Below are positions 13,479 through 40,053 of a stretch of DNA of 64,000 nt, in pieces. The notes beneath the pieces are model-generated. The model was not told where the DNA came from. It searched no databases and saw only the letters and a list, made by a program, of their open reading frames with translations. Both the position numbers and the translations under genes were made by a program. Within the stretch, counting starts at the first letter, position 1; every line of letters begins with the position of its first letter. The stretch covers positions 146,780 to 210,779 of the forward strand of contig NIVC01002709.1 of the NCBI GenBank assembly GCA_002269645.1, given 5' to 3'. The DNA is from Macrostomum lignano. Lineage: Eukaryota.

Positions 13479-13702
13479 CAACTCAAAGCAAAGAGAATGT
13501 TTTAAAAAAGTGTTGCCTGCTGTACACAGCAGTTGGAAACCTCGGGAAAAAAACTCTTCGAATAACTCTGGGTTAATAAACAATAAAAAGTTGCTGTCTA
13601 ATAAATAGACCAATGCAGTGAACCGGAGGCAGCAGCAGCAGCAGCAGCCCATTACTGCTCCTAGAAGTCATCGAAGGCCACACGAACCGCTTGCCGGTCT
13701 CC

Positions 13703-16700
13703 TCAGCTCTCAGCATAGTAGTAAACCGACTGGAAGAAATAAAAGCTTCTGAGTTAATCTCACCTGAAACACCTGCTTAATAAAAACTGAGTCTCACGTT
13801 GGGGTCGGGCGGCTTGGCAGCAGCCAGCAGCTCCACGGCCGCTCCTTGGCTGGTGACGCCAGCGGAGGCGGCGGCTGCTCGGGTCCGCTTCAGCACCGCG
13901 GCAGTCGCTGCGCCGCCCACTGCGACGGCTGCGGCCACCAAGCAGCTGATGACGACTGTCAGCAGCACACCGCTGTCAGAACTGCTTCTGCTTTTGGCGC
14001 TCGCTGAAGAACAAAATGTACTTTGTGAGCAGTGATCGAACCCTGTGAGCATTCTCACACAAACCAAAACTTGAATGCTCACGGAACACGGCTCGAACAG
14101 TCCTCGAGCTCTTCACCGGTGAGAACACAGCGCCGAGACCGGGCCAGCTCTGGCTGATCAGACACGTCACAGTGACCTCATCCTGTCGCTCAAAGAACTG
14201 GTGAGTCAGTCGAGCTCTCCGAATCCAGCCTCCGTGGCTGCCTCTGAGATCGGGCTCAGGAGTGAGCTGCTCAGTAACATCGAAGGTCAAGTAGAGGGCC
14301 GTGAGTTATGACATTGAGAATGCATGTACAGCAATGATGGACAGCAGCTTTGGTAGCAGCAAACATGAACTCACTGTGAGTCCTTCAATGCTGACTGTGT
14401 CGGACTTGATGGAGCAGTGCAGCTCGGGCCTCGGGTTTCCCTCCTGTGTCTGTCCCAGCAGACTCAGCTCAGAGCCGTTCAGCAGCTGGCCAGTCCAACC
14501 GATGCTGTTCGAAGGAACTGCAAGACAGTGCAATGACAGTTTTGCCTTCCATTTTGGTAAGTTACGTCGGGCTTGAACCTGTAGCTAGTGCATGCTTTCT
14601 GCTAGAATTTCGAGAGGTTCCTTCCTACTCACAGAACACAGTAATGTTTTGTACGAAATGTTACTCATTATCTCGCTTATCTATCACGTCTCCGCACATC
14701 ACGGAGCGTCCGTTAATTCGCAAACAGCGTAGCGGGTCAGGGTTCCCGATACCATAATCTTTGGTCCTATTCAAGTACAAGCTAACAACAGGCACCATTG
14801 CCACAGCATCAATTAAAGGCTTAAAATTCAAAACGGGAATAAATCATTGTGTTCAGAGCTCGGTGCAGGTCTCAGTCATTGGTTCCATGAGTTGAATGCT
14901 CAATAAGGATAAGGATAAAGATTCGTTTTTTACCCATCGCGAAAAGGTATATCATTGATGCATAATTCATTTCTGTCGACTGACAGTCTATGCCTCTAAA
15001 CAGATTAAATAATAAATCAACAATGAAATGGAACAAAGTGTAATTCACAAGTACGTTTCAATTGACACACCTGCAACAGGGCTCAGCAGGTAATTACTTA
15101 CTTATTGTAACAAGTATGAAGCTGAAAACTCACAATAGACAGTAACGTTCTGTGTGAATCTGCCATCCACATCTTCGAGGCCATGCTGAGAGACCCTGCA
15201 CTCCAAGGAGCCTCCGTTCATCTGCCTTGTGGAACTCCAGCTGAACTCAGATTCCACCAGCGTCTCAACGCCTAGATTTTGAGCCTCGGGGGTGTTTTGG
15301 GCCCTGGTCATGCTGGTGCTGAGACCCTCGGCTGTCCGCAGCCAGCACCGGTGACTGGGCTCAGGGTTGCCACCAACTGACCGAACTGAGACTGACACGG
15401 GCTCGCCCTCCTTCATCACCAGAGGCTGAGTTGCATTCCATGAGCTGCTTGACGCGTCTGTTTTCGTGCAGGTGCGAGCATGGATGGCTAATTGTCTCAG
15501 CAATCTGAGTTGCTAATAGATCAGAGATGCTGAACTGCAATCCACTCACATGACACATCGAGTTGCTCACTGCTGACATTCTGATTGAATACAAGTGTGC
15601 CGTCTGTACGAGTCTGAGCGACCTGGCAGATGACTCTCATCTGGTTGTGGCTGGCCGATGCATTGAGTCGCCACACTGATGAAGCATTTGACTCAGATGG
15701 CAGCTGGAGTCAACAGAGTCAGTAATTTATAAATTTATGCATAATTTTTGCATTGACAATTCACAGTGAGTAACTCACTCTGAGCTGTTTCAGATTGGCT
15801 CCACCGATTGAGCAGAAGTGCTGAGCAGGCGGATTTCCTGTTTCCAGAGTCTGCAGGGTGACTTGAGCTTCTCTTCCACTGCGGATTCGTCCAGGAGGCA
15901 GCTTGATTGACAGGCCGGAGCTGCGGTCTGAAATGCAGTTCGGTATGGCAGTCAGGTGAGCTGCATTGGATCTAACTGGTGAACTGGTTCCGCATTGGAT
16001 CTAACTGGTGAACTGGTTCCGCATTGGATCTAACTGGTGAACTGGTTCCGCATTGGATCTAACTGGTGAACTGGTTCCGCATTGGATCTAACTGGTGAGC
16101 TGGTTCCGCATTGGATCTAACTGGTGAACTGGTTCCGCATTGGATCCAACTGGTGAGCTGGTTCCGCATTGGATCTAACTGGTGAACTGGAGAACATGCA
16201 TCCAAGAACAAACAGAAGTACATGGACACTTACACAGAACTGCAGGCAGCTCGCGACGAGCCGTTACATCGAACAGTCCTGACTGGTTCACCCGACACAA
16301 AATTGATGCTGAGCTTCCCCAGCTCCTGCTCACAGTCACTGAGAATGTGCTGCTTGAGTTCGTGCTCTGAAAAGAGTCAGTTTTCACAGCTAAATTTCAG
16401 ATCATTGTTGCCATGCACCCAATACACAGGTGCAACCATGGGCCAGTGTGAGACTCACTGACAGCAGCTGAAGCGCTGTGTTTCCATTTCGCTGTGACTG
16501 CACAGAGCAGCTGTGGCTGATTGGCATCCAGTAGCAACCCGGTGTGTCAGCTGTCAGATTGACGGCTGCTCCGTCTGTCCAGCTGGTGTTTGCGGGGAGC
16601 AGAAAGTGAGTGGTGCAGGGCTCTGGAAGGGTTTGAGTAGTGAGTGGTGCAGGGCTCTGGAAGAGTTTGAGTAGTGAGTGGTGCAGGGCTCCGGAAGGGT

Positions 16701-18465
16701 TTTAGTAGTAAGTGGTACAGGGCTCTGGAAGAGTTTGAGTAGTGAGTGGTGCAGGGCTCTGGAAGGGTTTGAGTAGTGAGTGGTGCAGGGCTGTAAGCCT
16801 GGGTTTGTAAGCCTGACTCACTGGCTGACTACACACCCAGTGTGTGCGAAGTGCCAATCGCAGTCCCACCGTTGCAGCTGTGTCGGCACTTTAAAGCCGC
16901 CCCGTGCATTTCCATTTGCACTGTAAAAGTTCTCAGAATCAGAGAGCTGGCCATGACCTCCCTCTGCAATGCGAACGCCCACCGGTGCTGTTAATTCCCA
17001 TATCTGGTGCAAGCTCAAGTATTTATCTCAATCGAACTCTTACCGAACTCAACTCCAAGAGGTCACTGCCTTTCCGCATTCTGATGCTGCAGTTTGATGC
17101 AGCAGGTGCTCTGCAGTTTCCTGGCAGCCGAGCTCGAATCATCACTTTCTCATTGAGCTTGAGCTGAGACAAGTCTTCCACAAAGCATCCCCTGGGTTGT
17201 TCTTTACAGAAGTCAGCTGGAGAGCAGCCAGAGCTGCTGTCTCTGTTACGCTGAAAGCAGTCACTTTTCTCAATTTCAAGCAGCACAAAGTTCATCATCT
17301 TGTCAGTCTGATTGGCCACGAACTTCCTCAGCAGCACATACTGCGCCATCTGCAATGCGATGCTGCAACACTGCGAATTCCAATATTGAAAGAGTTGCAG
17401 CAACTGGGTGACAAACCTTGCCATCGGCCTCAGCTGAGCAGGTCACTTCATGCACCAAGTGCGACCTGAGTGAACTGCTGCTGTCATTTCTGGTGAAGCC
17501 GCAGTGTTGTGATCCGGACAGACTGTGACTGAAAGCGGCTGCAGTGCAGTTGGGTGCATCCTCATCCAGACCGGCTGGCTTCTCCTCACTGAGCAGCACT
17601 TCGATGCCCAGGGCTCTGTGGCTGGCTGAGAAAAGTTTAGTGAGCAAAATCTGATTTCAAAATATCGTTCAGATTGATACTGAAATATGCGTAGGACTCA
17701 CCCTCCTGTCTCCCATAGACAGTGATGGAGCGCACTGGGACACTTCGGGTCAGCTTCAGCAGCAGCCACTGGTAGCCGGAGGGGTCCGGAGTGTCGCTGG
17801 TAAGAAAATAGGCCCATTGCCCCGGCTTGTCCATTGATCTGATGAAGCAATCGCAGAATGCGTGATTGAAGACAGACGATTGCCAGGCATTGGCGATCTC
17901 AGCTCTGGAGACCTTGATGGCACAGCCTATGGATGTGGAGGTTCAACAACTTCGAAATATGACCTGTTATGAGACCATTTTGCGTTGTTTACGCTTTTGT
18001 CACAGTCAGCCAATTAGATAGAACTGCACGTAAGTCAACTACAACTCCATGGACATTTGCTCCATGGACAGCTAAAGCAGAAGAAAGTTTTCAGTGTTTT
18101 TTTAACTTCTGAACTTCTGGATTCAAAATATAGCAAGTATGCCTTGTGTCCGAGGTACGCTCACCAGTTTACCAGTACGATTTCACTGGAACTGCTACCG
18201 GAGACCGGCAGATAAACACACAGTTTCAGTGAACGAAATCTCAGCTGTTTCTGGTTGTAGTGTGCAAATTCTCCCCACAGAATTTCCCAATGGCGAAACC
18301 TCATCCAGAGCTTAGTTCTCAAAAACTGAAAACTTTCAATCCCACTAATCAGCATCAGCAAAAATAATTGAATTCTTTAAGGAGAAACAGTCGTAGTCAC
18401 TTACTGTTACTTATACAGTACGAAATGATTGCAAGGCACAGAAGTTCCTTCATGTGGACAGTCAT
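13703..18465 (-). CDS. Copy A: 14-exon type I membrane protein (~808 aa): signal peptide, F5/8C/F-type-lectin-like domain, ~5 atypical Ig-like domains, TM, short tail
   Basis: Exons 18465-18405, 17926-17702, 17625-17417, 17349(or 17370)-17044, 17003-16822, 16582-16459, 16366-16234, 15927-15779, 15703-15550, 15457-15134, 14517-14375, 14266-14083, 14003-13798, 13729-13703. All introns GT-AG, all phases compatible, no internal stop. SP MTVHMKELLCLAIISYCISNSCA; lectin-like AWQSS..QWLLLKLTRSVPVRSITVYGR..AQYVLL..LLEIE; C2-set-like GGNPEP..LECRVSQHG; TM GVLLTVVISCLVAAAVAVGGAATAAVL-KR; tail ..PPDPNSVYYYAES*. Confidence 0.8.
15961..16190 (+). repeat. 29-bp intronic minisatellite (GCATTGGATCTAACTGGTGAACTGGTTCC), intron 7 of copy A
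   Basis: About 8 head-to-tail units; about 9 units at 34496-34748 and 51356-51608. Confidence 0.95.
16606..16792 (+). repeat. 34-bp intronic minisatellite (AGTGAGTGGTGCAGGGCTCTGGAAGGGTTTGAGT), intron 5 of copy A
   Basis: About 5.5 units; one unit fewer at 35168-35322 and 52028-52182. Confidence 0.9.
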
Positions 18466-21064: not shown

Positions 21065-21575
<511 letters not shown>

Positions 21576-23168: not shown

Positions 23169-23269
23169 TTTTTATTGAATTTTTAAATCACTGAATCGGA
23201 AAGAGCAACTATTTGGGAAGCGGAAATCATTCACTGTTTTTGTCTTTGCTTTTATCTCTGTGTTGGCTG

Positions 23270-23625: not shown

Positions 23626-23744
23626 AGTATGATTAAAGTAGGCCTAATGTTACCTAGGGGATAAGGTTGATTTACTAATTTTTCGACTGCATACAAAGCA
23701 AATCAGTTTAAAGAAGATCAGCCAAAACTAGTTTTTACTAAATA

Positions 23745-24457
23745 CACAGATACATAGATACATAGATGCATAGATGCATAGGTACATAGATACATAGAAA
23801 CATAGATGCATAGATAAATATATACATAGATACCTAGATGCATAGGTACATAGGTACATAGATACATAGATACATAGGTACATAGGTACATAGGTACATA
23901 GATACATACGTACATAGGTACATAGTTACATAGATATATAGATACATAGATACATAGATACATAGGTACATAGGTACATAGGTACATAGATACATAGATA
24001 TATAGATACATAGATACATAGATACATAGATACATAGGTACATTGGTACATAGGTACATAGATAAATAGATGCATAGATACATAGATCCATAGATACATA
24101 GGTACATAGGTACATAGGTAGGTACATAGGTACATAGGTACATATGTACATAGGTACATATGTACATAGGTACATATGTACATAGGTACATAGGTACATT
24201 GGGACATAGGTACATTGGTACATAGGTACATAAATACATAGGTACATAGGTACATAGGTACATAGGTACATAGATCCATAGATACATAGATATATAGATA
24301 CATAGATACATAGATGCATAGGTACATAGGTACATTGGTACATAGGTACATAGGTACATAGATACATAGATGCATAGATACATAGATACATAGATACATA
24401 GATACATAGATACATAGGTACATAGGTACATAGGTACATAGGTACATAGGTACATAG
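23745..24457 (+). repeat. 8-bp (ATAGATAC/ATAGGTAC)n satellite
   Basis: Read directly; also at ~42286-42990 and ~57914-58640. Confidence 0.95.
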
Positions 24458-25489: not shown

Positions 25490-28080
25490 AAACACAGAGA
25501 GGGGAGGCAGAGAGACACAGAGAGGGGAGGCAGAGAGACACAGAGAGGGGAGGCAGAGAGAAACAGAGAGGGGAGGCAGAGAGACACAGAGAGGGGAGGC
25601 AGAGAGACAGAGAGAGGGGAGGCAGAGAGACAGAGAGGGGAGGCAGAGAGACAGAGAGGGGAGGCAGAGAGAGAGAGGGGGAAACAGAGAGACAGAGAGG
25701 GGAGGCAGAGAGACACAGAGAGGGGAGGCAGAGAGACACAGAGAGGGGAGGCAGAGAGAGACAGAGAGGGGAGGCAGAAAGACACAGAGAGGGGAGGCAG
25801 AGAAAGACAGACACAGAGAGGAGAGGCAGAGAGAGAGAGAGAGAGAGAGACAGAGAGGGGAGGCAGAGAGACACAGAGAGGTGAGGCAGAGAGACACAGA
25901 GAGGAGAGGCAGAGAGAGAGAGAGACACAGAGAGGGGAGGCAGAGAGACACAGAGAGGGGAAGCAGAGAGACACACAGAGAGGGGAGGCAGAGAGACACA
26001 GAGAGGGGAGGCAGAGAGACACAGAGAGGAGAGGCAGAGAGAGAGAGAGACACAGAGAGGGGAGGCAGAGAGACACAGAGAGGAGAGGCAGAGAGAGAGA
26101 GACACAGAGAGGGGAGGCAGAGAGACACAGAGAGGGGAGGCAGAGAGACATAGAGAGGGGAGGCAGAGAGACACAGAGAGGGGAGGCAGAGAGATACAGA
26201 GAGGGGAGGCAGAGAGACACAGAGAGGGGAGGCAGAGAGACACAGAGAGGGGAGGCAGAGAGACACAGAGAGGGGAGGCAGAGAGACATAGAGAGGGGAG
26301 GCAGAGAGACATAGAGAGGGGAGGCAGAGAGACACAGAGAGGGGAGGCAGAGAGACACAGAGAGGGGAGGCAGACAGACACAGAGAGAGGCAGAGAGACA
26401 CAGAGAGGTGAGGCAGAGAGACACAGAGAGGAGAGGCAGAGAGAGAGAGAGACACAGAGAGGGGAGGCAGAGAGACACAGAGAGGGGAAGCAGAGAGACA
26501 CACAGAGAGGGGAGGCAGAGAGACACAGAGAGGGGAGGCAGAGAGACACAGAGAGGAGAGGCAGAGAGAGAGAGACACAGAGAGTGAAGAGTTGATTCGG
26601 GAGGTGATCAGTCTCTCGAAAACTCCCACTTCCAGACACTTAAGCCTGGGAACAAAATAAAGTGATCACTTACTGTTGCGGGCTCCTCTTCTGTGGAGTG
26701 CAGGTTCTCCGAGCTCGTTTCTTCTAATCTTCTTCTTCTGTGTAGTGCAGGTTCTCCGAGCTCGTTTCTTCTAATCTTCTTCTTCTCCGGAGGAATCTTC
26801 TTGAAGTCTCGAATCGGCCGAATGAGAGCGTGACGATCAAATCAGGCGACGTCGCAGTATTTCTCGAATGCAAATCAATATAGGCCTTACGCTCAGTAAT
26901 CAATATCAACGATGCGCCCTTGTAATAAAATCAACTTTCTGTAATAATCACGAGGACCTCCAAGAGGGGCGTCTTCTTCTAGATCTAACGGAATCGGAGT
27001 CGTGTGCTCCTATCGGTTAATCTAGGATAACCAAAATCAATCAATCGATAATCCTCTAAGGGTATCGGAATCGGTCCGCAGATCCTATCCAATCCCTTAG
27101 GAAAATGGGAGGCCTCAAATTCAATGAACTCAGTCCAAACGACTGGACAGTAGCGGCCGGCAATAAATCGCTCTCAAAATCAATAACAAAGGCTCGAGCA
27201 ACGGCTCACCAATTGGTTTATCTCTCTCTCTCTCAGAGATGTAGCCTCGCTTAGCTGTTCCAGCAAGCTCCAAGATCTTTAGAGGCTGCTCCGAGTCCCA
27301 AGATCTTTTGAGGCTGCTCCGAGTCTGAGATTTTTAGCTCGGATTTTGGCTTGTATTTATAGGAAAAATTCTTGAGAAACAGCTTATTTTTAGTAGGTGA
27401 CAGTTTAGCGCTTTGGAAATTTGGCCCCTATGGAATACATTAGGTTTGAGCGTCAATACCATATTCGGAGTTCTAAATTTAAGTGTTGCAAAAGATGGTC
27501 ATTTGTTGCTTTCGTGGTCTTTAAAAATAGAGTGTGACAATTTGCAGTTTTTACATCATTCAAGTTTTTCGCATTTTTATGTTACTACTTACAGTAGTCT
27601 GCTTGTAATGCCTCTGGAGATCTCTACAAGAGGGGAGGCAGAGAGACACAGAGAGGAGAGGCAGAGAGACATAGAGAGGGGAGGCAGAGAGACACAGAGA
27701 GGGGAGGCAGAGAGATGCAGAGAGGGGAGGCAGAGAGACACAGAGAGGGGAGGCAGAGAGACACAGAGAGGGGAGGCAGAGAGACACAGAGAGGGGAGGC
27801 AGAGAGACATAGAGAGGGGAGGCAGAGAGACATAGAGAGGGGAGGCAGAGAGACACAGAGAGGGGAGGCAGAGAGACACAGAGAGGGGAGGCAGACAGAC
27901 ACAGAGAGGAGAGGCAGAGAGACACAGAGAGGGGAGGCAGACAGACACAGAGAGGAGAGGCAGAGAGAGAGAGAGAGACACAGAGAGGGGAGGCAGAGAG
28001 ACACAGAGAGGAGAGGCAGAGAGAGAGAGACACAGAGAGGGGAGGCAGAGAGACACAGAGAGGGGAAGCAGAGAGGAAGA
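25490..28080 (+). repeat. 23-bp GA-rich minisatellite (AGAGAGGGGAGGCAGAGAGACAC), interrupted by a solo LTR
   Basis: Read directly; uninterrupted versions at ~44023-44940 and ~59687-60650. Confidence 0.95.
26585..27628 (-). mobile_element. Putative solo LTR (1044 bp)
   Basis: Unique sequence starting TGAAGAG and ending CTCTACA (TG..CA, 6/7 inverted match), flanked by AGAG on both sides. Minus-strand CTATAAATA at ~27354-27362; internal short direct repeats; no coding signature. Absent from the other two minisatellite copies. Confidence 0.65.
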
Positions 28081-28980
28081 CACGGTTAAATTGCCTTATA
28101 TAGAAAGTGTTGTTTACACGGAAATTTCTAGAAGGCTGGATACGATAACAGTCCCCCCACGCCGGGGTTGGAGTCCTGACGGAGTAAGGGAGAAGTATCT
28201 ACTTTACATTTACAGAGATGGACCTTGATACAATCGCCTGCTAGTACTGGGTGATACATATACTTCAGGTAGCGACATGTAGGTGTGGTGCTGTCACAAA
28301 TGTTCAGGTTACAATGCTACCAGAATTTCTATTATTGAATCAATAATTTCGGAAACAATCAGGTACTTGTGTATTTTTAGTAATCGACAAGCTATAAACT
28401 AAGGACAGAAAATCGGTCAGGAAGTCACATGTTTACCTCACATATATACACTCATGATTTGTCTGTGGCGTTTCCAACTATATATGGCATTCACCGCTGG
28501 CATGCGATGAGCCGCGCCGAAGGTAAACAAGCCGTGTTTAGCATTACTGCAGCCTTCGGCTCGCTGCCATAAATAGGTGCCAATCTTTCTAAAAAAAGGG
28601 ATCGAGTGGAATTTAAATGAGGTAAAATTATAAATGTATCGCCAACACGACAATCATTGAAATTAATTGAAATTGAAGCCCGGACCGTATTGTGTACTGC
28701 GTGAAACTATGCAAAATGCACAGAAGTGTTCTGTGTCTCCATGCGCTCGAATAGAAACAAACTTTTTATTGAAATTCAAGAGAAAAACAAGAGAAAAGCT
28801 GAGTAACTATACAAAAGATAATTGTTTAAAAACAATTCACTGCACTTTTTGCGATCCTTGATTGAGTTAAAGAATAACATATATGACAAAGCAATAACGT
28901 TTCTGTGAAACATGGCAGCAGAAAACCCAGTGTCAAAGCAAAGATAATAATAATAATTTGACTACACCTTTCTTAACGTG

Positions 28981-31215
28981 TGTAGCGAGTGAATCAAAAC
29001 GCAGTGGAATTTGTTTTGTGGAAGTGAGATAGAACGGTTGTAAACCCTTGACGGGCTCTAACTTCGGCTTTATTCGATTTTAGAGACAGTAACGAGAACA
29101 GCTTAAGAATATCGTCTAGGGCCAAAAGGGACTCGCTGCTAGCTGATTAATGCTTCTCACTGCTACAAGATACTCCCCCTCCTAGATGAAGTACATCACT
29201 ATGCATTATCTAATCGGAGACAAAAAGTTCGAACAGCGCAGGGGAACGAGTAGGTAAGCAATGCAGATGTCATAGGTTGATCAGTTTATGAACACTGTTC
29301 AGGTATTGCTAGGTGGACTGTCCTTCTGGAAAACTTGCACGGAGGTCTCGCTCTTGAATCGCACGCGATTTGCGCTGCGCGACCTTGTGTTAGAGGCGGG
29401 AGCGTCGCTTGGCGGGGCCGGTGTAGCTGCTGGCTGCTCTAGTTGGGCTATTGGTAGGGTGGCGGGCTTGACACGATCGATCGACACTACGGTAGGCTTG
29501 CCGTTGATCTTGAGTGTCATTGTGGTGTCGTGCCTGTCCAGTACGGCGTACGGGCCTTGGTAAGGAGCCTCCAGGGGTCGTCGCACCCGGTCCAACCGCA
29601 ACCAGACGTGTGTGCACGAACTCAGCGCGGCTGGCAGATGCACGGCTATCTCGCGCGTTCTCAGCTGCCGGTATGGGAAGAAAAGCTGATGTAGGCTAGT
29701 CGAGAGCTCCTTGAGCGCAGAAGTGTCGATGACGACTGGTGGGACCAGCGGTTGCTCACCCGTAACAACGGAGAACGACGGGCAGCTGCTGCAGCCAGTT
29801 CTTGCCGCGCGCCTTCAAACCGAGCTTCAGCGTCCGGTGTGCACGTTCGATGACACCGTTTGCTCTCGGATTATAGGCTGAAGTGCGGATGTGGTGGATG
29901 CCGAGTAGGTCCGTCAAGTTTCTTATGAGCTCCGCTCGGAATTGGGATCCCTGGTCACTGATCAGCGTCAAAGGTGGGCCTTTGCGTCAAAGGCGTCAAA
30001 GGTGGGCATCCGCAGGTATTCGAACGAGCCGAACGGGGTACAAATCGCCGTCTTCTCGATGTCCTCATCTGCCATCGGAACGAAGTGATAGGCCTTGACG
30101 AGGTCAAGAGTGCTGAAAACTTTCGCACCGTGCAGCTGATGATGGAAATGGTTGATATTAGGGATAGGGTAGCGGTCTGGCTTGGTTGCCGCGTTTAAGG
30201 CTCGATAGTCTCCGCAAGGTCTCCAGGAGCCGTCCTTTTTCTTCACCATGTGAAGCGGGGAGGCCGACAGACTGGCGGAGGGGCGGACGATGCCAAGGCG
30301 CAGTGAGCTTGTCGAACTCCGCTTTTGCAACCGCGAACTTGGCAGGGGCAAGCGGTCGCGGTCGACAAAAAATGCGCTCGCCAGTGGTCTCAAAACGATG
30401 CCGAACCGACGTGGCGGGTGCTGCGGTGTAGTCCGGAGCTTCCAGAACTCGAGGGAACCGAGCAAGCGGTGTGGTGGGCTCAAGCAGCGTGTTGGCGTTG
30501 ATTTGAGGGACTGAATCACTAGAAGAACAGAGAGTCGCACGCAAAGATGTCACAGGGTCTTGAATGCGCCGTGAATTCAGGTCAATTAGGAGACCGAGCT
30601 TGAGGAAGAAATCTGCACCGAGGATTGGCGCAGTACTAGTAACAATGAACGTCGCAAGGGTATAGTCTAGGTTCGGATTTTGCCGCCTTCGACGCCACAA
30701 AGCTTGACATAAGTGGGTACGAGTAGATTTTGAGGAACAAACTGCAAAGGAAGGAGCGACCGTTCGGCGCCGGTGTCAACGATGAACGAAACGGGCGCAC
30801 GGAGAACTTGGCAACGAAGCAGCAACGTGGTGGCCTTTGACGGGTCGCGGCTCGGCCGAGGCACATGACCGACTATTTTGACGCCTGGCTTGGCGTCGGG
30901 CTGGACGCCCGGGACTGAACCGGAGTGGGCTGACGGCTGGCCAGCAGTGTCGGCGGTTTCGAGCCTGGCCACTGGCACCATGGTCGACAGGTGCGAGCAT
31001 CGGCAGCGTAGTAGAGATGACCGTTGCAGATCTTGGGTCGTCGGCGTGAGTTCCGGTTGGAGCACGAGTCGTCGGGCTTCCTGTTACGAAAAGAACCAGC
31101 GTTGCCTCTCAGGTGCTCTTGGCCGGTGGCCGAGGTGCGGTTTACAGAGGCGAACGGGGTGGCGCAACCGGCGACAGCCAGCATGCTGTCGGCGATCTTT
31201 GCAAACCACTTTGCA
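28981..31215 (-). mobile_element. Internally deleted Ty3/Gypsy element of CsRn1 type (gag end, protease, RT start, integrase end, PPT, 3' LTR)
   Basis: Gag CHCC motif C-NG-H-x9-C-RPW-C; protease IVDTGAERS; [35 protein letters not shown]; integrase ISDQGSQF..YNPRANGVIER..LEAPYQGPY; PPT at 29173-29183; LTR TGTAGC..GCTACA at 28981-29167. The 5' part is replaced by a SINE junction. Confidence 0.9.
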
Positions 31216-31219
31216 GACC

Positions 31220-31400
31220 ACCGCCACACACCCTCAATTACCCCAGCTAATGCTGGCACCCATTTTACAGCTTGGTGAACTGAAGCAATGCAGAGTTGAA
31301 TTGAGTGTCTTCCTCAAGGACAGAATTGTTCCGAATGGGACGAGAATCGAACCTCTGATCTTTCAGTCGTGAATCCGACGCTCTAACCACTATAACCCAC
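31220..31400 (-). mobile_element. tRNA-derived SINE, 3'-truncated at the Gypsy junction
   Basis: Same family as 13200-13478 (..TTAGAGCGTCGGATTCACGAC..GGTTCGATTC..); copy at ~48080-48260. Confidence 0.8.
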
Positions 31401-31404
31401 TATA

Positions 31405-32000
31405 AATTAATGAATAATTAATAAATTTTAACATTCCAAAAGTCTGAATATTAAACAAATTTTAACATTTCAAGTCAGAATAATTAACAAATTTTAACAT
31501 TTCAACTCTGAATAATTAACAAATTTTAACATTTAAAGTCTAAATAATTAATAAATTTTAACATTCCAAAAGTCTGAATAATTAACAAATTTTAACATTT
31601 AAAGTCTGAATAATTAACAAATTTTAACATTTCAAGTCTAAATAATTAATAAATTTTAACATTCCAAAAGTCTGAATAATTAACAAATTTTAACATTTAA
31701 AGTCTGAATAATTAACAAATTTAAACATTTCAAGTCTGAATAATTAACAGATTTTAACATTTAAAGTCTAAATAATTAATAAATTTTAACATTCAAAAAG
31801 TCTGAATAATTAACAAATTTTAACATTTAAAGTCTGAATAATTAACAAATTTAAACATTTCAAGTCTGAATAATTAACAGATTTTAACATTTAAAGTCTA
31901 AATAATTAATAAATTTTAACATTCAAAAAGTCTGAATAATTAACAAATTTTAACATTTCAGGTCTGAATAATTAACAAATTTTAACATTTCAAGTCTGAA
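31405..32000 (+). repeat. AT-rich 32-bp satellite with a 98-bp (32+32+34) higher-order pattern
   Basis: Unit AAGTCTGAATAATTAACAAATTTTAACATTT(C/A); AGTCT starts at 31571, 31603, 31635 and 31669. Copy at ~48265-48860; not present downstream of gene copy A. Confidence 0.9.
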
Positions 32001-32291
32001 TACGAGCGTACTTAACAACATCTTGTACCTTTAACAGAGACCTCTTCGCAAAATGAGAAACAGATCCATGTAAATATCAGCTTCTCCTCCTGCAACACGG
32101 CAACGAGTGAAATTTTCAAGTATGAGCTGAATATTAAAAAAATTATCAAAAATTACAAGCCATATTGATTTGCTGAGCGCGTTAAATGAATCTGGATAAG
32201 ACAAGAACGAGAATTCATCTGTTAGTTAGTGTCAAATATCAGTACGGGAAAAGCTCACAAAAAACTGCATCGCAAGCCATACACCGCCTCC

Positions 32292-35200
32292 TCAGAAGCC
32301 ATCGGATGCCTCACGGACCGCGTGCCGCTCTCCTCTGCTCACAGCACAGTAGTAAACCGACTGGAAGGAATAAAAGTGTTGCTGAGTTATTCTCACATGA
32401 AATGCCTGCTTGATACAAGCTGAGTCTCACGTTGGGGTCGGGCGGCTTGGCAGCAGCCAGCAACTCCACGGCCGCACCCTGGCTGGCAGCGGCGGCTGCC
32501 GCGGCAATCGCTGCGCCGTCCACTGCGCCCGCTACCAGAGCTGCCTGTAGCGCACGCTGAAGGACAATGTGTACTTTGTGAGCAGTGATCGAACCCTGTG
32601 AGCATTCTCACACAAACTAAAACTTGAATGCTCACGAAACACGGCTCGAAAAGTCCTCGAGCTCTTCACCGGTGAGAACACAGCGCCGAGACCGGGAAAG
32701 CTCTGGCTGATCAGACACGTCACAGTGACCTCATCCTGTCGCTCAAAGAACTGGTGAGTCAGTCGAGCTCTCCGAATCCAGCCTCCGTGGCTGCCTCTGA
32801 GATCGGGCTCAGGAGTGAGCTGCTCAGTAACATCGAAGGTCAAGTAGAGGGCCGTGAGTTATGACATTGAGAATGCATGTACAGCAATGATGGACAGCAG
32901 CTTTGGTAGCCGCAAACATGAACTCACAGTGAGTCCTTCAATGCTGACTGTGTCGGACTTGATCGAGCAGTGCAGCTCGGGCCTCGGGTTTCCCTCCTGT
33001 GTCTGTCCCAGCAGACTCAGCTCAGAGCCGTTCAGCAGCTGGCCAGTCCAACCGATGCTGTTCGAAGGAACTGCAAGACAGTGCAATGACAGTTTTGCCA
33101 TCCATTTTAGTAAGTTACGTCGGGCTTCAACCTGTAGCTAGTGCGTGCTTTCTGCTAGAAGTTCGAGAGGTTCCTTCCTACTCACAGAACACAGTAATGT
33201 TTTGTACGAAATGTTACTCATTATCTCGCTTATCTATCACGACTCCGCACATCGCAAACAGCGTAGCGGGTCAGGGTTCCCGATACCATAATCTTTGGTC
33301 CCATTTAAGTACGAGCTAACAACAGCCACCATTGCCACAGCATCAATTAAAGGCTTAAAATTCAAAACGGGAATAAATCATTGTGTTCAGAGCTCGGTGC
33401 AGGTCTCAGTCATTGGTTCCATGAGTTGAATGCTCAATAAGGATAAGGATAAAGATTCGTTTTTGACCCAACGCGAAAAGTTATATCATTGATGCATAAT
33501 TCATTTCTGTCGACTGACAGTCCATGCCTCTAAACAGCTGATAAATAATTTATAAATCAACAATGAAATAGAACAAAGTGTAATTCACAAGTACGTTCCA
33601 ATTGACCTGCAACAGGCTCAGCAGGTAATTACTTACTTATTGTAACAAGTATGAAGCTGAATACTCACAATAGACAGTAACGTTCTGTGTGAATCTGCCA
33701 TCCAGATCTTCGAGGCCATGCTGAGAGACCCTGCACTCCAATGACCTTCCGTTCATCTGCCTTGTGGAACTCAAGCTGAACTCAGATTCCACCAGCGTCT
33801 CAACGCCTAGATTTTGAGCCTCGGGGTTGTTCTGGGCCCTGGTCATGCTGGTGCTGAGACCCTCGGCTGTCCGCAGCCAGCACCGGTGACTCGGCTCAGG
33901 GTTGCCACCGACTGACCGAACTGAGACTGACACGGGCTCGCCCTCCATCATCACCAGAGGCTGAGTTGCATTCCATGAGCTGTTTGACGCGTCTGTTTTC
34001 GTGCAGGTGCGAGCATGGATGGTTAATTGTCTCAGCAATCTGAGTTGCTGATGGATCAGAGATGCTGAACTGCAATCCACTCACATGACACATCGAGTTG
34101 CTCACTGCTGACAGACTGATTGAATACAAGTGTGCCGTCTGCATGAGTCTGAGCGACCTGGCAGATGACTCTCATCTGGTTGTGGCTGGCCGATGCATTG
34201 AGTCGCCACACTGATGAAGCATTTGACTCAGATGGCAGCTGAGTCAACAGAGTCAGTAATTTATAAATTTATACATAATTTTTGCATTGACAATTCACAG
34301 TGAGTAACTCACTCTGAGCTGTTTCAGATTGGCTCCACCGATTGAGCAGAAGTGCTGAGCAGGCGGATTTCCTGTTTCCAGCGTCTGCAGGGTGACTTGA
34401 GCTTCTATTCCACTGCGGATTCGTCCAGGAGGCAGCTTGATTGACAGGCCGGAGCTGCGGTCTGAAATGCAGTTCGGTATGGCAGTCAGGTGAGCTGCAT
34501 TGGATCTAACTGGTGAACTGGTTCCGCATTGGATCTAACTGGTGAACTGGTTCCGCATTGGATCTAACTGGTGAACTGGTTCCGCATTGGATCTAACTGG
34601 TGAACTGGTTCCGCATTGGATCTAACTGGTGAACTGGTTCCGCATTGGATCTAACTGGTGAACTGGTTCCGCATTGGATCTAACTGGTGAACTGGTTCCG
34701 CATTGGATCTAACTGGTGAACTGGTTCTGCATTGGATCTAACTGTTGAACTGGAGAACATGCATCCAAGAACAAGCAGAAGTACATGGACACTTACACAG
34801 AACTGCAGGCAGCTCGCGACGAGCCGTTACATCGAACAGTCCTGACTGGTTCACCCGACACAAAATTGATGCTGAGCTTCCCCAGCTCCTGCTCACAGTC
34901 ACTGAGAATGTGCTGCTTGAGTTCGTGCTCTGAAAAGAGTCAGTTTTCACAGATAATTGTCAGATCATTGTTGCCATGCACCCAATACACAGGTGCAACC
35001 ATGGGCCAGTGTGAGACTCACTGACAGCAGCTGAAGCGCTGTGTTTCCATTTCGCTGTGACTGCACAGAGCAGCTGTGGCTGACTGGCATCCAGTAGCAA
35101 CCCGGTGTGTCAGCTGTCAGATTGACGGCTGCTCCGTCTGTCCAGCTGGTGTTTGCGGGGAGCAGAAAGTGAGTGGTGCAGGGCTCTGGAAGGGTTTGAG

Positions 35201-36996
35201 TAGTGAGTGGTGCAGGGCTCTGGAAGGGTTTGAGTAGTGAGTGGTGCAGGGCTCCGGAAGGGTTTGAGTAGTAAGTGGTACATGGCTCTGGAAGAGTTTG
35301 AGTAGTGAGTGGTGCAGGGCTGTAAGCCTGGGTTTGTAAGCCTGACTCACTGGCTGACTGCACACCCAGTGTGTGCGAAGTGCCAATCGCAGTCCCACCG
35401 CTGCAGCTGTGTCGGCACTTCAAAGCCGCCCCGTGCATTTCCATTCGCACTGTAAAAGTTCTCAGAATCAGAGAGCTGGCCGAGACCGCCCTCTGCAATG
35501 CGAACGCCCACCGGTGCTGTTAATTCCCATATCTGGTGCAAGCTCAAGTATTTATCTCAATCGAACTCTTACCGAACTCAACTCCAAGAGGTCACTGCCT
35601 TTCCGCATTCTGATGCTGCAGTTTGATGCAACAGGTGCTTTGCAGTTTCCTGGCAGCCGAGCTCGAATCATCACTTTCTCATTGAGCTTGAGCTGAGACA
35701 AGTCTTCCACAAAGCATCCCCTGGGTTGTTCTTTACAGAAGTCAGCTGGAGAGCAGCCAGAGCTGCTGTCTCTGTTACGCTGAAAGCAGTCTCTTTTCTC
35801 AATTTCAAGCAGCACAAAGTTCATCATCTTGTCAGTCTGATTGGCCACGAACTTCCTCAGCAGCACATACTGCGCCATCTGCAATGCGATGCTGCAACAC
35901 TGCGAATTCCAATATTGAAAGAGTTGCAGCAACTGGGTGACAAACCTTGCCATCGGCCTCAGCTGAGCAGGTCACTTCATGCACCGACTGCGACCTGAGT
36001 GAGCTGCTGCTGTCATTTCTGGTGAAGCCGCAGTGTTGGAATCCGGACAGACTGTGACTGAAGTTGGCAGCAGTGCAGTTGGGTGCATCCTCATCCAGAC
36101 CGGCTGGCTTCTCCTCACTGAGCAGCACTTCGATGCCCATGGCTCTGTGGCTCACTGAGAAAAGTTTAGTGAGCAAAATCTGATTTCAAAATATCGTTCA
36201 GATTGATACTGAAATGTGAAGGGAGGACTCACCCTCCTGTCTCCCATAGACAGTGATGGAGCGCACTGGGACACTTCGGGTCAGCTTCAGCAGCAGCCAC
36301 TGGTAGCCGGAGGGGTCCGGAGTGTCGCTGGTAAGAAAATAGGCCCACTGCCCCGGCTTGTCCATTGATCTGATGAAGCAGTCGCATTCTGGGTGATTGT
36401 AGACAGACGATTGCCAGGCATTGGCGATCTCAGCTCTGGAGACCTTGATGGCACAGCCTGTGGATGTGGAGGTTCAACAACTTCGAAATATGACCTGTTA
36501 TGAGACCATTGTGCGTTGTTTACGCTTTTGTCACAGTCAGCCAATTAGATAGAACTGCACGTAAGTCAACTACAACTCCATGGACATTTGCTCCATGGAC
36601 AGCTAAAGTAGAAGAAAGTTTTCAGTGTTTTTTTAACTTCTGAACTTCTGGATTCAAAATCCAGCAAGTATGCCTTGTGTCCGAGGTACGCTCACCAGTT
36701 TACCAGTACGATTTCACTGGAACTGCTACCGGAGACCGGCAGATAAACACACAGTTTCAGTGAACGAAATCTCAGCTGTTTCTGGTTGTAGTGTGCAAAT
36801 TCTCCCCACAGAATTTTCCAATGGCGAAACCTCATCCAGAGCTTAGTTCTCAAAAACTGAAAACTTTCAATCCCACTAATCAGCATCAGCAAAAATAATT
36901 GAATTCTTTAAGGAGAAACAGTCGTAGTCACTTACTGTTACTTATACAGTACGAAATGATTGCAAGGCACAGAAGTTCCTTCATGTGGACAGTCAT
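32292..36996 (-). CDS. Copy B of the lectin/Ig gene; ectodomain intact, TM exon shortened (secreted variant or pseudogene)
   Basis: ATG 36996; exons 1-12 collinear with copy A with splice sites conserved. Exon 13 (32556-32431) is 126 nt versus 206 nt in A. The homologous acceptor gives a frameshift (stop at 32311); an acceptor at 32540 restores frame (stop at 32292) but without the TM helix. Confidence 0.7.
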
Positions 36997-37450
36997 ATCG
37001 CAGAGCTGTACTTTGTAAAATAACAATTTTACATATAAGCTGCTGCTAGCAACAGCTGTGGTATCGCTGGGCCTCCCAACCTTAGTCGAGCCGATGTTTA
37101 TAGGAAAGCGGCAGGGCTGCGTGTGGAGGCGGAAATGCAGCCGCAGCCCATAGGCTGGAAGAAGATTGGCTGGCTCTGGCTGGCTGCAAAACAGGCAAGC
37201 GAGGTGCGAGATTGGAGGCCAATGAGGCTGGCGAAGATGGCGGAATCAGCAGCTTCTCTCAGCAGTGAGGGGCTTGAAGAAATGTGAGTACAGAAGATCC
37301 TCATTCATTTTCTGCCTGCCTGGGGGGTCTTTCTCAAAAGCAACTTATGATCGGCCATAGACGTAAGTTGGGGAGGAAGTGCCTGTGCTATAGAATCAAG
37401 AGTAATTTTAAGAGCTAGGAGGCTCCTTTAAGGAGACCATTTTAGGAGAC

Positions 37451-37643
37451 CAGTGGCGGATCCTGGGGGGGGGGCAAGGGGACCATGGCCCCCCCTCAGC
37501 TGCCTCGAAAAAAATTCTGCTCTTGGCCTTTGGCCCCCTTCTACCAGTAAGTAAAGAAAGGGCTTGGGCCTTGGGGTGGGTTCCTACTCGGGGCAGTATG
37601 AAAAAAGTTGGCCCCCCTCAATAAATTCCTGGATCCGCGCCTG
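37451..37643. mobile_element. hAT-type MITE (duplicate of 18920-19114)
   Basis: Same TIRs and TAGGAGAC TSD; poly-G run 2 nt shorter. Confidence 0.9.
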
Positions 37644-38111
37644 TAGGAGACCTCATAAAGGTTTCTGCAAGTGCTAAAGAATAAGGATTGAGGAGTTGGA
37701 GCTACTGTGGGTGCTGGGTGTTGCCGTTTCGGAGTGAATTTTAGGAGTGCGTGTCCTATAGAAGGAGCGAATTTCATTTCTAGCTCCTAACTCCGATAGT
37801 TAAGATTTCAAGGGCCAAATTGTACTCTTAGGTTAGTAGGAGTGTCTTTTTGTCATGTTTCGGACAGTGACCTGGGCTCTGACGATAAAGAAGCCAACGT
37901 TTGGCGACCCAGGCAATTCAGGCAAAGGATAAACTCTTCGAAGAATTTCGTACTGCATCTCGATTTCGGCTCAATAAGAGTCAACGCCAATTTCAACAAA
38001 CATGTTGCATCTTAAAGCATCACGAATCAGCTTAGATTCCGACATGTACTATTTTCTGTGAGCTGTTTTGCTGAGCACAATATTTACCACTTTTATGGTC
38101 TCTAATAGCAC

Positions 38112-38609
38112 TCTAAGTACGGCGTGGTGGTCGAGCTAATGAAAAACAACGACTTTCTAGTCAAGCTGACCAGCGGCCGGGTTCTTCGGAGAAACCGAAA
38201 GTTCCTACGGAGAAGGTTTCCAGCACATGCGGCGGAAGCTCGCTACCAGCCCAATACTGGCCCTGCGGACTCGCAAGGTACGAATGGAGCCAGAGGGCCG
38301 GAAGGACGATCAAGACCGTGGCATACGAGAAACCGTCGGCCACCCAACAGGCTTCAGATTGACCCCCGCAAAAGTTCGTACGACTGACTGACAAGAAGTC
38401 ACATTGTAACTGAAGGGGGAGGTGTTGTGTATGAGTGTGCATATGCATGTGTGTGACACTGAAGCTTGGGCTATACTCGTATGAATATTACTGTCTATGG
38501 TATAAATACACGTGACGGCCTAGAGAGACGGCCATGCCCTCTGAGCTTTAGTTTCATCAGACCGCGCGCTATAGAAGATATAACCCTCTCGGCTTCGCGA
38601 TATATAACA
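38112..38609 (+). mobile_element. Gypsy integrase end, PPT and LTR (duplicate of 19583-20080)
   Basis: Identical ORF translation; LTR at 38423-38609. Confidence 0.85.
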
Positions 38610-39616
38610 CCTTCACCCTTCTTATACAATATTTCTTATACCAGAGTTAGTTGTTTATCAAATGGGAGCAATTAACTAACGATAGCAGTTAAACCATTTA
38701 CTATTGACTTGGTCTATCAACTAATTAAATGCGCAGGCTTGTAGTCTAAAATGGTTTTATTGCTTTACACGCTCGTAGCTCACGAGAGCCGCTTTTCACA
38801 GGGCAATAAAAGCTTGTTGTTGTTGCATACTCCTTAAAAGTGCATATATTTAGGAGGAGTTTAATATAGCACGCAGATTGGCCAGACTTCTTAGCCAATC
38901 ACGCATCGGCAATTCTAGGATTGCAATCTGTGAAACTTACTCAGGCAGAATAAAACAAAACAAAACCAATTCAGACAATCTTCAAAACTCCTAAAACAAA
39001 AAAATTTTCAGCTTCAGTAATACTTTATTTTTGCAACGCTTTATTCGCATTTCTGATTAACGGAGTAATAAAACAATCAGATAAGAGTTATCAATCAGTC
39101 AGTCAATCAGTCACTGGAACACACGCAAGTCAGAGAGGCAAGCAAAGCTACTCAATCAGTGATTATCAAACGCCATTGGCAGGAGTCGGACTCCCCATCG
39201 GTTCTGCTGTGGAGCTCAAATGACAAAATAAAAAGTTAAAACAAGGAAAAGCGAGGCGATCGACAGAAATATTCGGCGAAATGTTTCAGCCAGCAGTCCG
39301 AAAAAGGGGATCAGGCCGCAGGGAGGATGATAAACAGTTTATAGCAGTGCAGGTGCGCTTAACCGATTGGTGCAGCTGCACCAGAGCAGTGCAGTGCCCG
39401 GTGCGAGGGTGCAAATCCTGCGGCTCTGATCCCCTTTCCTCAGGGCAGTGCTGAACGGCCATGCAAAAAGAGCGAAAAGTACACAAACCGTCAAGTAAAA
39501 GTGCAAGCGGTAAAATAAATCTATATTTCGATACATATCGGTAGGTTGCATTCGCTGAAACTCTTGAAACTCAGTCAAGAGATAAGAGATACAGTCTGTC
39601 TGTCTGTCTGCCTGCC

Positions 39617-39781
<165 letters not shown>

Positions 39782-39836
39782 TAGTCTATGTGTTTGTCTG
39801 TCTGTCTGTCTGTGTCTATGGGCTTGTCTGTCTGCC

Positions 39837-39891
<55 letters not shown>

Positions 39892-39892
39892 G

Positions 39893-40053
<161 letters not shown>

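What the first reader, a model, noticed from the sequence alone, without database searches (positions are those of the whole stretch)
32292..32556. Paralogs B and C have lost the transmembrane helix: possible soluble or decoy partners of receptor A
Seen: exon 13 is 80 nt shorter than in A and the GVLLTVVISCLV..VLKR segment is gone. The normal acceptor yields a Cys/Gly/Arg-rich tail (PCATGSSGSGRSGRRSDCRGSRRCQPGCGRGVAGCCQAARPQLGLLLCCEQRRAARGP*). An acceptor 16 nt downstream (32540) restores the A frame but gives only LVAGAVDGAAIAAAAAASQ. Exons 1-12 remain open with splice sites intact. Known: paired membrane and soluble forms are common in immune receptor clusters. Inference: a receptor/secreted-variant pair; early pseudogenisation is the alternative.
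Basis: partly seen in the sequence, partly recalled or inferred. Interest (0 to 1): 0.75.

Follow-up and report, generated by a model that had tools for sequence, protein, structure and literature searches.

The report
Flatworm receptor copies missing membrane anchor
Two near-identical tandem copies of a flatworm-specific cell-surface receptor gene have lost their membrane anchor through a frameshifting deletion, and the neighbouring anchored copy carries a premature stop codon, so this looks like ordinary decay in a young gene cluster rather than a receptor/decoy pair.

Summary
The window is Macrostomum lignano DNA with three tandem 14-exon paralogs on the minus strand (A, B, C). They belong to a lineage-restricted family: signal peptide, lectin-like N-domain, Ig-like domains, TM helix, Tyr-motif tail. 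In B and C exon 13 is 126 nt against 206 nt in A. The TM-coding core is gone, and both predicted tails reproduce exactly. Exons 1-12 and all splice sites are intact.

- B and C are one allele, recently duplicated (0 of 2316 intron mismatches), so the TM loss is a single event.
- The Cys/Gly/Arg tail is the out-of-frame reading of a 70-74 % GC, Ala-rich exon; the same frame is open in A.
- "Receptor A" has CAG>TAG in exon 5, seven nt before the conserved donor; only a weaker in-frame donor could rescue it.
- Ectodomain dN/dS is about 0.65, not different from 1 (p = 0.25). Exons diverge about as much as introns (2.4 % vs 2.9 %).
- No database protein contains exons 11-14.

TM anchoring is ancestral: every C-terminally complete relative has it. 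The best reading is birth-and-death decay in a recombining array. A functional secreted variant is not excluded (about 20-25 %).

The parts
32431..32556 (-). Gene B exon 13, shortened TM exon (126 nt; 80 nt shorter than in A)
   Evidence: normal acceptor acattgtccttcag|CG and donor CAAC|gtgaga conserved; the TM-coding core is absent; identical to the C copy
32311..32360 (-). Gene B exon 14, coding part in the frameshifted reading (LGLLLCCEQRRAARGP*). In the A frame the stop is at 32294-32292.
32540..32542 (-). Alternative AG acceptor (AG at 32542-32541, exon would start at 32540) that would restore the A frame
   Evidence: for the reading; crude PWM score -3.0 against 8.9 for the normal acceptor
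32311..36996 (-). Gene B, 14 exons: E1 36996-36936, E2 36457-36233, E3 36154-35946, E4 35878-35573, E5 35492-35351, E6 35185-35022, E7 34929-34797, E8 34461-34313, E9 34238-34085, E10 33992-33669, E11 33070-32928, E12 32819-32636, E13 32556-32431, E14 32360-32311
   Evidence: spliced model guided by the M. lignano proteins P0001/P0004/P0006; all junctions GT..AG; ORF open for 789 aa
49170..53862 (-). Gene C, 14 exons, the same model as B (E12 49678-49495, E13 49415-49290, E14 49219-49170). Differs from B at 2 of 2194 coding positions in E1-E12 and 0 of 2316 aligned intron positions.
13703..18465 (-). Gene A, 14 exons, with the full TM exon: E1 18465-18405, E2 17926-17702, E3 17625-17417, E4 17349-17044, E5 16963-16822, E6 16622-16459, E7 16366-16234, E8 15927-15779, E9 15703-15550, E10 15457-15134, E11 14517-14375, E12 14266-14083, E13 14003-13798, E14 13729-13703
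13891..13971 (-). TM helix coding segment of A (GVLLTVVISCLVAAAVAVGGAATAAVL, followed by KRTR)
   Evidence: KD19 2.55, summed dGapp -0.96
16829..16831 (-). Premature TAG in exon 5 of A (CAG in B, C and all UniRef paralogs), 7 nt upstream of the conserved donor GCCA|GTGAGT
16835..16840 (-). Possible in-frame rescue donor in A (TGG|GTGTGT, exon would end at 16837, 15 nt upstream of the canonical end). It would replace GV*SAK by E.
   Evidence: PWM score 7.6 against 9.9 for the canonical donor
13610..13989 (-). 3' boundary of the high-identity A/B block. Identity falls from 93-100 % to 83 %, then 71 %, then becomes unalignable, starting in the TM-coding part of exon 13.

Best explanation
The window carries a tandem array, with a unit of about 17-18.5 kb on the minus strand, of a Macrostomum-restricted gene family. 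The family encodes type I membrane proteins: a signal peptide, a roughly 290-aa N-terminal region with faint F-type-lectin/discoidin resemblance, four Ig-like domains mostly split over exon pairs, a stalk, a TM helix and a short Tyr-motif tail.

In the lineage leading to B and C, slippage-type deletions totalling 80 nt in the 70 % GC, Ala-codon-rich exon 13 removed the core of the TM helix and shifted the frame. With the conserved strong acceptor, the mRNA would encode the complete ectodomain followed by 58 residues of out-of-frame sequence (8 Cys, 11 Arg), ending in the last exon. The TM helix, the stop-transfer KRTR and the cytoplasmic VYYY-x-E motif are all lost.

The lesion-bearing unit was then copied by unequal crossing-over or gene conversion. 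B is C-type from its 3' flank to just upstream of exon 1, and A-type further upstream. Copy A independently acquired a nonsense codon in exon 5.

The most likely status of B/C is therefore a young, not yet otherwise degraded, non-functional or neutral truncated copy: birth-and-death turnover in a redundant neopolyploid genome. If it is expressed, the default product is a secreted or ER-retained ectodomain, not a membrane receptor.

Shown: the gene structures, the lesions, the loss of the TM helix, the polarity of the change, the mosaic relationships. Inferred: the absence of a selected function.
For: - Gene models, and the intactness of E1-E12 in B/C.
- The 80-nt deficit, and the identity of B and C in E13.
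- TM present in A and absent in both B/C readings.
- The normal acceptor is far stronger than the frame-restoring one (8.9 vs -3.0 on a PWM built from this gene's own sites).
- The tail equals frame 2 of A's exon, which is also open in A.
- TM-anchored architecture is ancestral: homology of the last Ig domain to P0006, E = 1e-6; all C-terminally complete relatives have a TM helix plus a Tyr tail; A shares SVYYY-x-E with P0008's TVYYYEE.
- A's TAG is derived, since CAG is present in B, C and P0001-5.
- No detectable purifying selection since the A-B/C split: dN/dS 0.62-0.67, binomial p = 0.25; exon divergence 2.4 % against intron 2.9 %.
- Derived amino-acid changes are split evenly, 13 on A and 12 on B/C.
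- B and C: 2 coding and 0 intron differences; 99.6 % identity over 9.3 kb, with B's upstream region of A type.
- No database protein carries exons 11-14 in any reading, and this subfamily has no NCBI (RNA-seq-based Mlig_3_7) model.
- The genome is a recent polyploid with 180 Mb of non-repetitive duplicated blocks at 95 % identity or more (PMC5730564; PMC10733133).
Against: - Twelve exons (731 codons) and 26 splice sites remain intact in B and C. The stop lies in the last predicted exon, so NMD is not expected.
- The TM-less unit is present at least twice.
- The 3' module of B/C (E13 3' part, intron 13, E14) is much more diverged from A (83 % and 71 %) than the gene body (about 97 %). So the TM-less 3' end might be old and maintained while the body is homogenised by conversion.
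- With only about 52 substitutions the dN/dS test has little power. A value of 0.65 is also what diversifying immune-type receptors show.
- Absence from protein databases is weak evidence for lack of expression.
Confidence: 0.6

Rival explanations
1. B/C are functional secreted variants (soluble or decoy, or opsonin-like) of a membrane receptor family, analogous to LILRA3 among the human LILRs. The ectodomain is exported through the signal peptide and binds the same ligands as TM-anchored paralogs, which need not be copy A since other family members exist elsewhere in the genome.
For: - Intact 731-codon ectodomain ORF, signal peptide and all splice sites.
- No TM or GPI signal.
- The stop codon is in the last exon.
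- The unit has been duplicated.
- The 3' module is older than the body.
- Soluble members and soluble splice forms are known in Ig-receptor clusters and can act as decoys (PMC10679719).
Against: - The tail is an unselected out-of-frame reading with 8 cysteines that would probably disturb folding in the ER.
- dN/dS is not different from 1, and exon divergence is about equal to intron divergence.
- The adjacent TM copy is itself interrupted.
- No annotated protein or transcript-derived ORF contains these exons.
- Intactness of the body is expected anyway for a young lesion in a gene-converting array.
Confidence: 0.22
2. B/C still make a membrane protein, either by splicing exon 12 (or 13) to an unrecognised downstream TM exon, or by using the acceptor at 32540 so that LVAGAVDGAAIAAAAAAAS serves as a weak anchor.
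For: - The alternative acceptor restores the ancestral frame through to exon 14.
- Its hydrophobic stretch reaches KD19 = 1.79.
- Hydrophobic open windows exist downstream at about 32149 and about 28960.
Against: - Summed dGapp for the Ala-rich stretch is +5.25 kcal/mol, with an Asp in the middle.
- The acceptor scores -3.0 against 8.9 and lies 16 nt behind a perfect polypyrimidine-CAG site.
- The downstream hydrophobic windows are AT-rich UTR-like sequence, without homology to any family TM exon and without support.
- In the A frame the Tyr motif is changed (YYY to YYC) and the stop is displaced.
Confidence: 0.06
3. Part of the picture is an assembly artefact. B and C, or the whole three-copy array, may be haplovariants or subgenome copies of one locus stacked in tandem by the assembler, and the small lesions (A's TAG, the exact frame of the deletion) may be consensus errors.
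For: - B and C have 0 mismatches in 2316 intron bases.
- The published M. lignano assembly contains three subgenomes, and 36 % of its length lies in chimeric scaffolds (PMC10733133).
- The assembly has substantial redundancy (PMC5730564).
Against: - B and C have different upstream flanks, about 93 % identical over more than 7 kb, and the array has a regular mosaic structure typical of unequal crossing-over.
- A 44-50-nt absence of TM-coding sequence is not a polishing error.
- A's TAG is a substitution, not an indel.
- Independent UniRef models show many near-identical paralogs of this subfamily.
Confidence: 0.12

Closest known systems
Macrostomum lignano 'Ig-like domain-containing proteins' (UniRef A0A1I8GAA5, A0A1I8HGA7, A0A1I8IDU2, A0A1I8GC01, A0A1I8J580; more distant A0A1I8IYP7, A0A1I8J1C7, A0A1I8GMR8; NCBI PAA49974.1 and PAA78035.1)
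   Same: Exons 1-10 of A/B/C are 93-100 % identical to the first group. The distant members share the domain order and end in a TM helix plus a Tyr-containing tail. A's C-terminus SVYYYAES matches TVYYYEE of A0A1I8J1C7.
   Different: The close UniRef models stop at the end of exon 10 and skip exon 9, so none shows the 3' end. B/C differ from every C-terminally complete member in lacking the TM helix. None of these proteins has a described function.
LILRA3 within the human LILR cluster (a germline-encoded soluble member of a TM Ig-receptor family)
   Same: A tandem multigene cluster of C2-type Ig-domain receptors in which one member lacks the TM and cytoplasmic region and exists only in soluble form. 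[quoted passage not shown]
   Different: LILRA3 is expressed and secreted and has known ligands. Here expression, secretion and ligand are all unknown, the tail is a frameshift product, selection is not detectable, and the adjacent TM copy is interrupted. There is no sequence relationship beyond the Ig fold.
Unprocessed pseudogenes in birth-and-death multigene families (for example KIR/LILR pseudogenes; general model of Nei and Rooney, from my own knowledge)
   Same: Tandem duplicates with single disabling lesions (frameshift deletion in B/C, nonsense codon in A), near-neutral substitution pattern, mosaic identity from unequal crossing-over or gene conversion, retrotransposon insertions between units.
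   Different: The B/C lesion truncates only the last 8 % or so of the protein and leaves a potentially secretable ectodomain, so loss of function is not proven.
F-type lectin / F5/8 type C (discoidin) domains
   Same: The N-terminal region shows the pattern (A/S)WQSS...W.YF...G.QWLL(I/L)KL...V..(I/V)TV(Y/F)(G/A)R. Weak best hits go to Pfam F5_F8_type_C and to the F-type lectin FBP32, PDB 3cqo.
   Different: Both hits are below significance (13.7 bits against a cutoff of 28.2; E = 0.19), and structure prediction failed. Resemblance only.

Membership tests
Macrostomum TM Ig-like receptor family (type I membrane protein) | N-terminal signal peptide | tested here: met
   MTVHMKELLCLAIISYCISNS|C in A, B and C. 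Paralogs P0014 and P0018 start MAQLLALCALCAALCALGGAASS. Judged by inspection and hydropathy only.
Macrostomum TM Ig-like receptor family (type I membrane protein) | Ig-like (C2-set) ectodomain repeats homologous to family members | tested here: met
   Pfam C2-set_2 21.3 bits against a cutoff of 21 on exon 10. 93-100 % identity to P0001-5. Last Ig domain homologous to P0006, E = 1e-6.
Macrostomum TM Ig-like receptor family (type I membrane protein) | Single TM helix followed by basic stop-transfer residues | tested here: not met
   For B and C: best 19-mer dGapp is +9.05 (normal reading) or +5.25 (alternative acceptor). Copy A meets the feature (-0.96, then KRTR).
Macrostomum TM Ig-like receptor family (type I membrane protein) | Short cytoplasmic tail with a Tyr motif (VYYY-x-E / TYYED / YxxY) | tested here: not met
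   For B and C: lost in the normal reading, and SVYYC... with a displaced stop in the A frame. Present in A and in P0008, P0016 and P0023.
Functional soluble/decoy receptor paralog (LILRA3-like) | Intact signal peptide and ligand-binding ectodomain, with no TM or GPI anchor | tested here: met
Functional soluble/decoy receptor paralog (LILRA3-like) | Purifying selection on the ectodomain after loss of the anchor | tested here: inconclusive
   dN/dS 0.62-0.67 on about 52 substitutions, p = 0.25 against neutrality; exon divergence 2.4 % against intron 2.9 %. The B/C branch cannot be isolated without outgroup DNA.
Functional soluble/decoy receptor paralog (LILRA3-like) | An intact membrane-bound partner sharing the ectodomain | tested here: not met
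   For the proposed partner A: in-frame TAG in exon 5 under canonical splicing. Rescue by a weaker donor is possible but unproven. Other TM paralogs exist elsewhere in the genome.
Functional soluble/decoy receptor paralog (LILRA3-like) | Transcription, correct splicing and secretion of the product | not testable with these tools
   No transcript data were reachable. No database protein contains exons 11-14.
Unprocessed pseudogene | Disabling lesion relative to the ancestral reading frame | tested here: met
   B/C: frameshifting deletion in exon 13. A: nonsense codon in exon 5. The B/C lesion removes only the anchor and the tail.
Unprocessed pseudogene | Neutral evolution and lack of expression | tested here: inconclusive
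   dN/dS is compatible with 1 but the test has little power. Expression is not testable.
F-type lectin / discoidin domain | Significant match to the domain profile or fold | tested here: not met
   Pfam F5_F8_type_C 13.7 bits against a cutoff of 28.2. PDB profile search best hit FBP32, E = 0.19. The AF2 model was unusable, pLDDT 29.7.

The most novel reading that the evidence does not exclude
The TM-less 3' module is old: its divergence from A's 3' end is several times that of the gene body. It may be maintained while the ectodomain is kept identical to membrane paralogs by gene conversion. On that reading B/C encode a secreted lectin-like/Ig recognition protein, an opsonin or decoy, of a flatworm-specific receptor family. 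That would be an invertebrate parallel to paired membrane/soluble immune receptors, arising by a genomic deletion rather than by alternative splicing.
Probability: 0.2. Interest if true: 0.55.

Novelty: new member of a known kind. Interest (0 to 1): 0.25.

Why it matters
If B/C were shown to be expressed and secreted, they would be a first handle on a lineage-restricted, tandemly expanding lectin-like/Ig receptor family in a regenerating flatworm model that can be made transgenic. They would also be an example of a membrane receptor turned into a soluble one by a germline deletion.

As the evidence stands, the locus mainly illustrates routine birth-and-death turnover, with a frameshift, a nonsense codon, unequal crossing-over and gene conversion, in a highly redundant neopolyploid genome. 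It is also a caution for annotators. The public models of this subfamily are truncated at exon 10 and skip exon 9, and the one copy that looks like an intact receptor has a stop codon hidden next to a splice donor.

Tried and rejected
- The look-up of encoding contigs for P0001: not on record.
No genomic or transcript context from elsewhere could therefore be fetched.
- Search of the 5.8-billion-protein database with an alignment of the three C-terminal variants (E11-E14): no hit at E <= 0.01.
- AlphaFold2 of P0004 with the 6-sequence family alignment: mean pLDDT 29.7, unusable, so no fold search was run.
- Profile of the N-terminal domain against PDB sequences: best hit FBP32, E = 0.19, not significant. 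Pfam gives only sub-threshold F5_F8_type_C.
- Scan for a downstream alternative TM exon in B/C: only AT-rich hydrophobic windows, without acceptor or homology support.
- GPI-type C-terminal hydrophobic signal: absent in both B/C readings.
- Rfam over the whole window: nothing.
- Poly(A) hexamers after exon 14: none within 900 nt in B/C and one at +730 in A, which is uninformative.
- Polarising amino-acid changes with the UniRef paralogs, to see which lineage is decaying: an even split of 13 to 12, not discriminating.
- Literature search for this family in Macrostomum: nothing specific.
Full report
**What the window is.** The finding lies in a eukaryotic, repeat-rich sequence. A search with the conceptual ectodomain returned only Macrostomum lignano 'Ig-like domain-containing proteins'. 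Their exons map to three places in the window at 93-100 % identity, all on the minus strand. Using these proteins (P0001, P0004) for exons 1-10, the distant TM-bearing paralog P0006 for the 3' exons, and an enumeration of frame-keeping GT..AG junctions, I built 14-exon models for three tandem paralogs: A (18465-13703), B (36996-32311) and C (53862-49170).

**Check of the observation.**
- Exon 13 is 206 nt in A and 126 nt in B and C, and it is identical in B and C.
- The missing 80 nt comprise the core of the TM helix (a 44-50-nt gap, GVLLTVVISCLVAAA) and the stop-transfer/juxtamembrane residues (30 nt in total, VLKRTRAAAA). The exact placement of the gaps is ambiguous in this 70-74 % GC, Ala-codon-rich exon.
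With the AG 16 nt downstream (exon start 32540) the A frame is restored, giving PLVAGAVDGAAIAAAAAAASQ...DGF*.
- Exons 1-12 of B and C are open, have the same lengths as in A, and keep every splice site.
- A has a convincing TM helix (KD19 2.55; summed dGapp -0.96; followed by KRTR). Neither B/C reading has one (+9.05 and +5.25), and neither ends in a GPI-like hydrophobic segment.

1. Copy A, the supposed receptor, has CAG>TAG in exon 5 (window 16831-16829), seven nucleotides before the conserved donor GCCA|GTGAGT. B, C and all five UniRef paralogs have Gln there. A weaker donor 15 nt upstream (TGG|GTGTGT) would skip the stop in frame. On a crude matrix built from this gene's own sites it scores 7.6 against 9.9. 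Rescue is therefore possible, but the canonical site should compete.
2. B and C differ at 2 of 2194 coding positions and at 0 of 2316 aligned intron positions. They are one allele, copied very recently, so the TM loss is a single event.
3. The Cys/Gly/Arg-rich tail is simply frame 2 of the ancestral exon. A's own frame 2 reads ...RSGRRSDCRGAEAD...GAAGCCQAARPQ and is equally open. A long open alternative frame is expected at this GC content.
4. The frame-restoring acceptor is poor (-3.0 against 8.9) and sits just behind a perfect polypyrimidine-CAG site.

**Polarity and family.**
- An exhaustive HMMER search of 1.84 billion representatives with P0006 found only 19 proteins at E <= 0.001. Every named member looked up is from M. 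lignano; the weakest hits, unrelated repeat and Ig proteins, were not looked up.
- Among the family members whose C-terminus is complete, each has a TM helix followed by basic residues and a Tyr-containing tail. They are P0006, P0008, P0010, P0015, P0016 (two fused tandem genes), P0019 and, partly, P0023.
- P0008 ends ...PTVYYYEENPALPDRPP, and A ends ...PPDPNSVYYYAES*. The A frame of exon 14 is therefore the ancestral coding frame.
- The last Ig domain of A/B/C (exons 11+12) aligns with the last Ig domain of P0006 (E = 1e-6). In P0006 that domain is followed directly by the stalk and the TM helix.
- Hence B/C lost the anchor; A did not gain it.
- Pfam recognises one C2-set Ig domain at threshold. 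The N-terminal region resembles F-type-lectin/discoidin domains only below significance, and structure prediction failed.

**Selection.**
- Between A and B/C, exons 1-12 differ at 2.4 % of sites and introns at 2.9 %. dS is 0.032-0.034, dN 0.021-0.022 and dN/dS 0.62-0.67.
- With 36 of 52 changes non-synonymous against 76 % expected, neutrality is not rejected (p = 0.25).
- Derived amino-acid changes, polarised with the UniRef paralogs, are split 13 (A) to 12 (B/C).
- The test has little power and cannot isolate the B/C branch, but it gives no support for a constrained ectodomain.

**Structure of the array.**
- A and B are 93-100 % identical from upstream of exon 1 through intron 12. Identity then drops to 83 % (exon 13-intron 13) and 71 % (exon 14 region), after which homology disappears. 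The high-identity block ends in the TM-coding part of exon 13.
- B equals C (99.6 %) from the 3' flank to about 300 bp upstream of exon 1. Further upstream it equals A (98.6 %) and not C (about 93 %).
- The units are therefore mosaics produced by unequal crossing-over or gene conversion.
- This cuts both ways. The intact body of B/C may simply be homogenised or young. Equally, the diverged 3' module might be old. The deletion itself cannot be dated.
- B/C-specific satellite and LTR-retrotransposon fragments lie just 3' of exon 14.

**Expression.**
- No transcript data could be reached.
- No protein in the 5.8-billion-sequence collection contains exons 11-14 in any of the three readings.
- The subfamily has only older UniRef models, which end at exon 10 and skip exon 9. 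It has no NCBI model from the RNA-seq-based Mlig_3_7 annotation, whereas more distant family members do (PMC5730564). This is weak negative evidence.
- No credible downstream TM exon exists.

**Conclusion.** The sequence facts are right. The biological reading 'soluble/decoy partners of receptor A' is not established, and one pillar of it, an intact receptor A, is contradicted. The most economical explanation is birth-and-death turnover in a young, recombining tandem array within a neopolyploid, highly redundant genome (PMC5730564; PMC10733133). One lineage lost its anchor by a frameshifting deletion and was then duplicated, and the other acquired a nonsense codon.

A functional secreted variant, as with LILRA3 among the human LILRs (PMC10679719), remains possible at roughly one chance in four or five. 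RNA-seq junction counts and a secretion assay would settle it quickly.

Noticed in passing
window 16829-16831 (minus strand), exon 5 of copy A: CAG>TAG nonsense codon 7 nt upstream of the conserved GTGAGT donor in the only TM-bearing copy. An in-frame alternative donor 15 nt upstream could bypass it.
   Followed up: yes
window 28042-37322 vs 44900-54204, and 35168-44932 vs 16639-26398: Unit B is a recombinant. It is C-type (99.6 %) from the 3' flank to just upstream of exon 1 and A-type (98.6 %) further upstream, which indicates recent unequal crossing-over or gene conversion in the array. A fourth unit's 3' flank begins at about 60876.
   Followed up: partly
window 882-1313 (+): ORF with a parvovirus-VP1-type phospholipase-A2-like domain (Pfam PF08398, E = 8.5e-14). 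An integrase-like ORF lies at 448-741 (-) and a 'YTDTDS' polymerase-B-like fragment at 10863-11156 (-). Possibly endogenous viral or Maverick-like debris.
   Followed up: partly
window 5642-9698 (-): Apparently intact non-LTR retrotransposon: a 713-aa ORF with an endonuclease domain (Exo_endo_phos_2), a 582-aa ORF with reverse transcriptase (RVT_1), and a C2H2 zinc-finger ORF.
   Followed up: partly
window 9511-10692 (-): 394-aa ORF with a PIF/Harbinger-type DDE_Tnp_4 transposase domain (E = 2e-33).
   Followed up: partly
window 61874-63748 (-); degraded copies at 29300-31370 and 46160-48230: LTR-retrotransposon pol (RNase H plus integrase). The degraded copies sit directly 3' of genes B and C but not A, next to a 32-nt-unit satellite (31411-32002, 48270-48861).
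   Followed up: partly
exon 9 of all copies (A 15703-15550, B 34238-34085, C 51097-50944) and the end of exon 10: The public UniRef models of this subfamily skip exon 9, which encodes the second half of an Ig domain, and all terminate at the exon 10 donor. They are probably truncated or mis-spliced predictions, or they reflect a real short isoform.
   Followed up: partly
intron 5 (A 16605-16792; B 35186-35350): A 34-nt tandem repeat inside intron 5 that contains repeated copies of the exon 6 acceptor context (CTTCCAG|AGCCCTGCACCACTCAC). A has one extra unit. This is a potential source of alternative acceptors.
   Followed up: no
window 21065-21576, 23276-24470, 25480-26570 and their counterparts in units B and C: Long microsatellite and minisatellite arrays (GACA-type 'DRQT' repeats, 8-nt-period 'YVPMYLCT' repeats, a 23-nt AG-rich satellite) fill the intergenic parts of each unit.
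   Followed up: no
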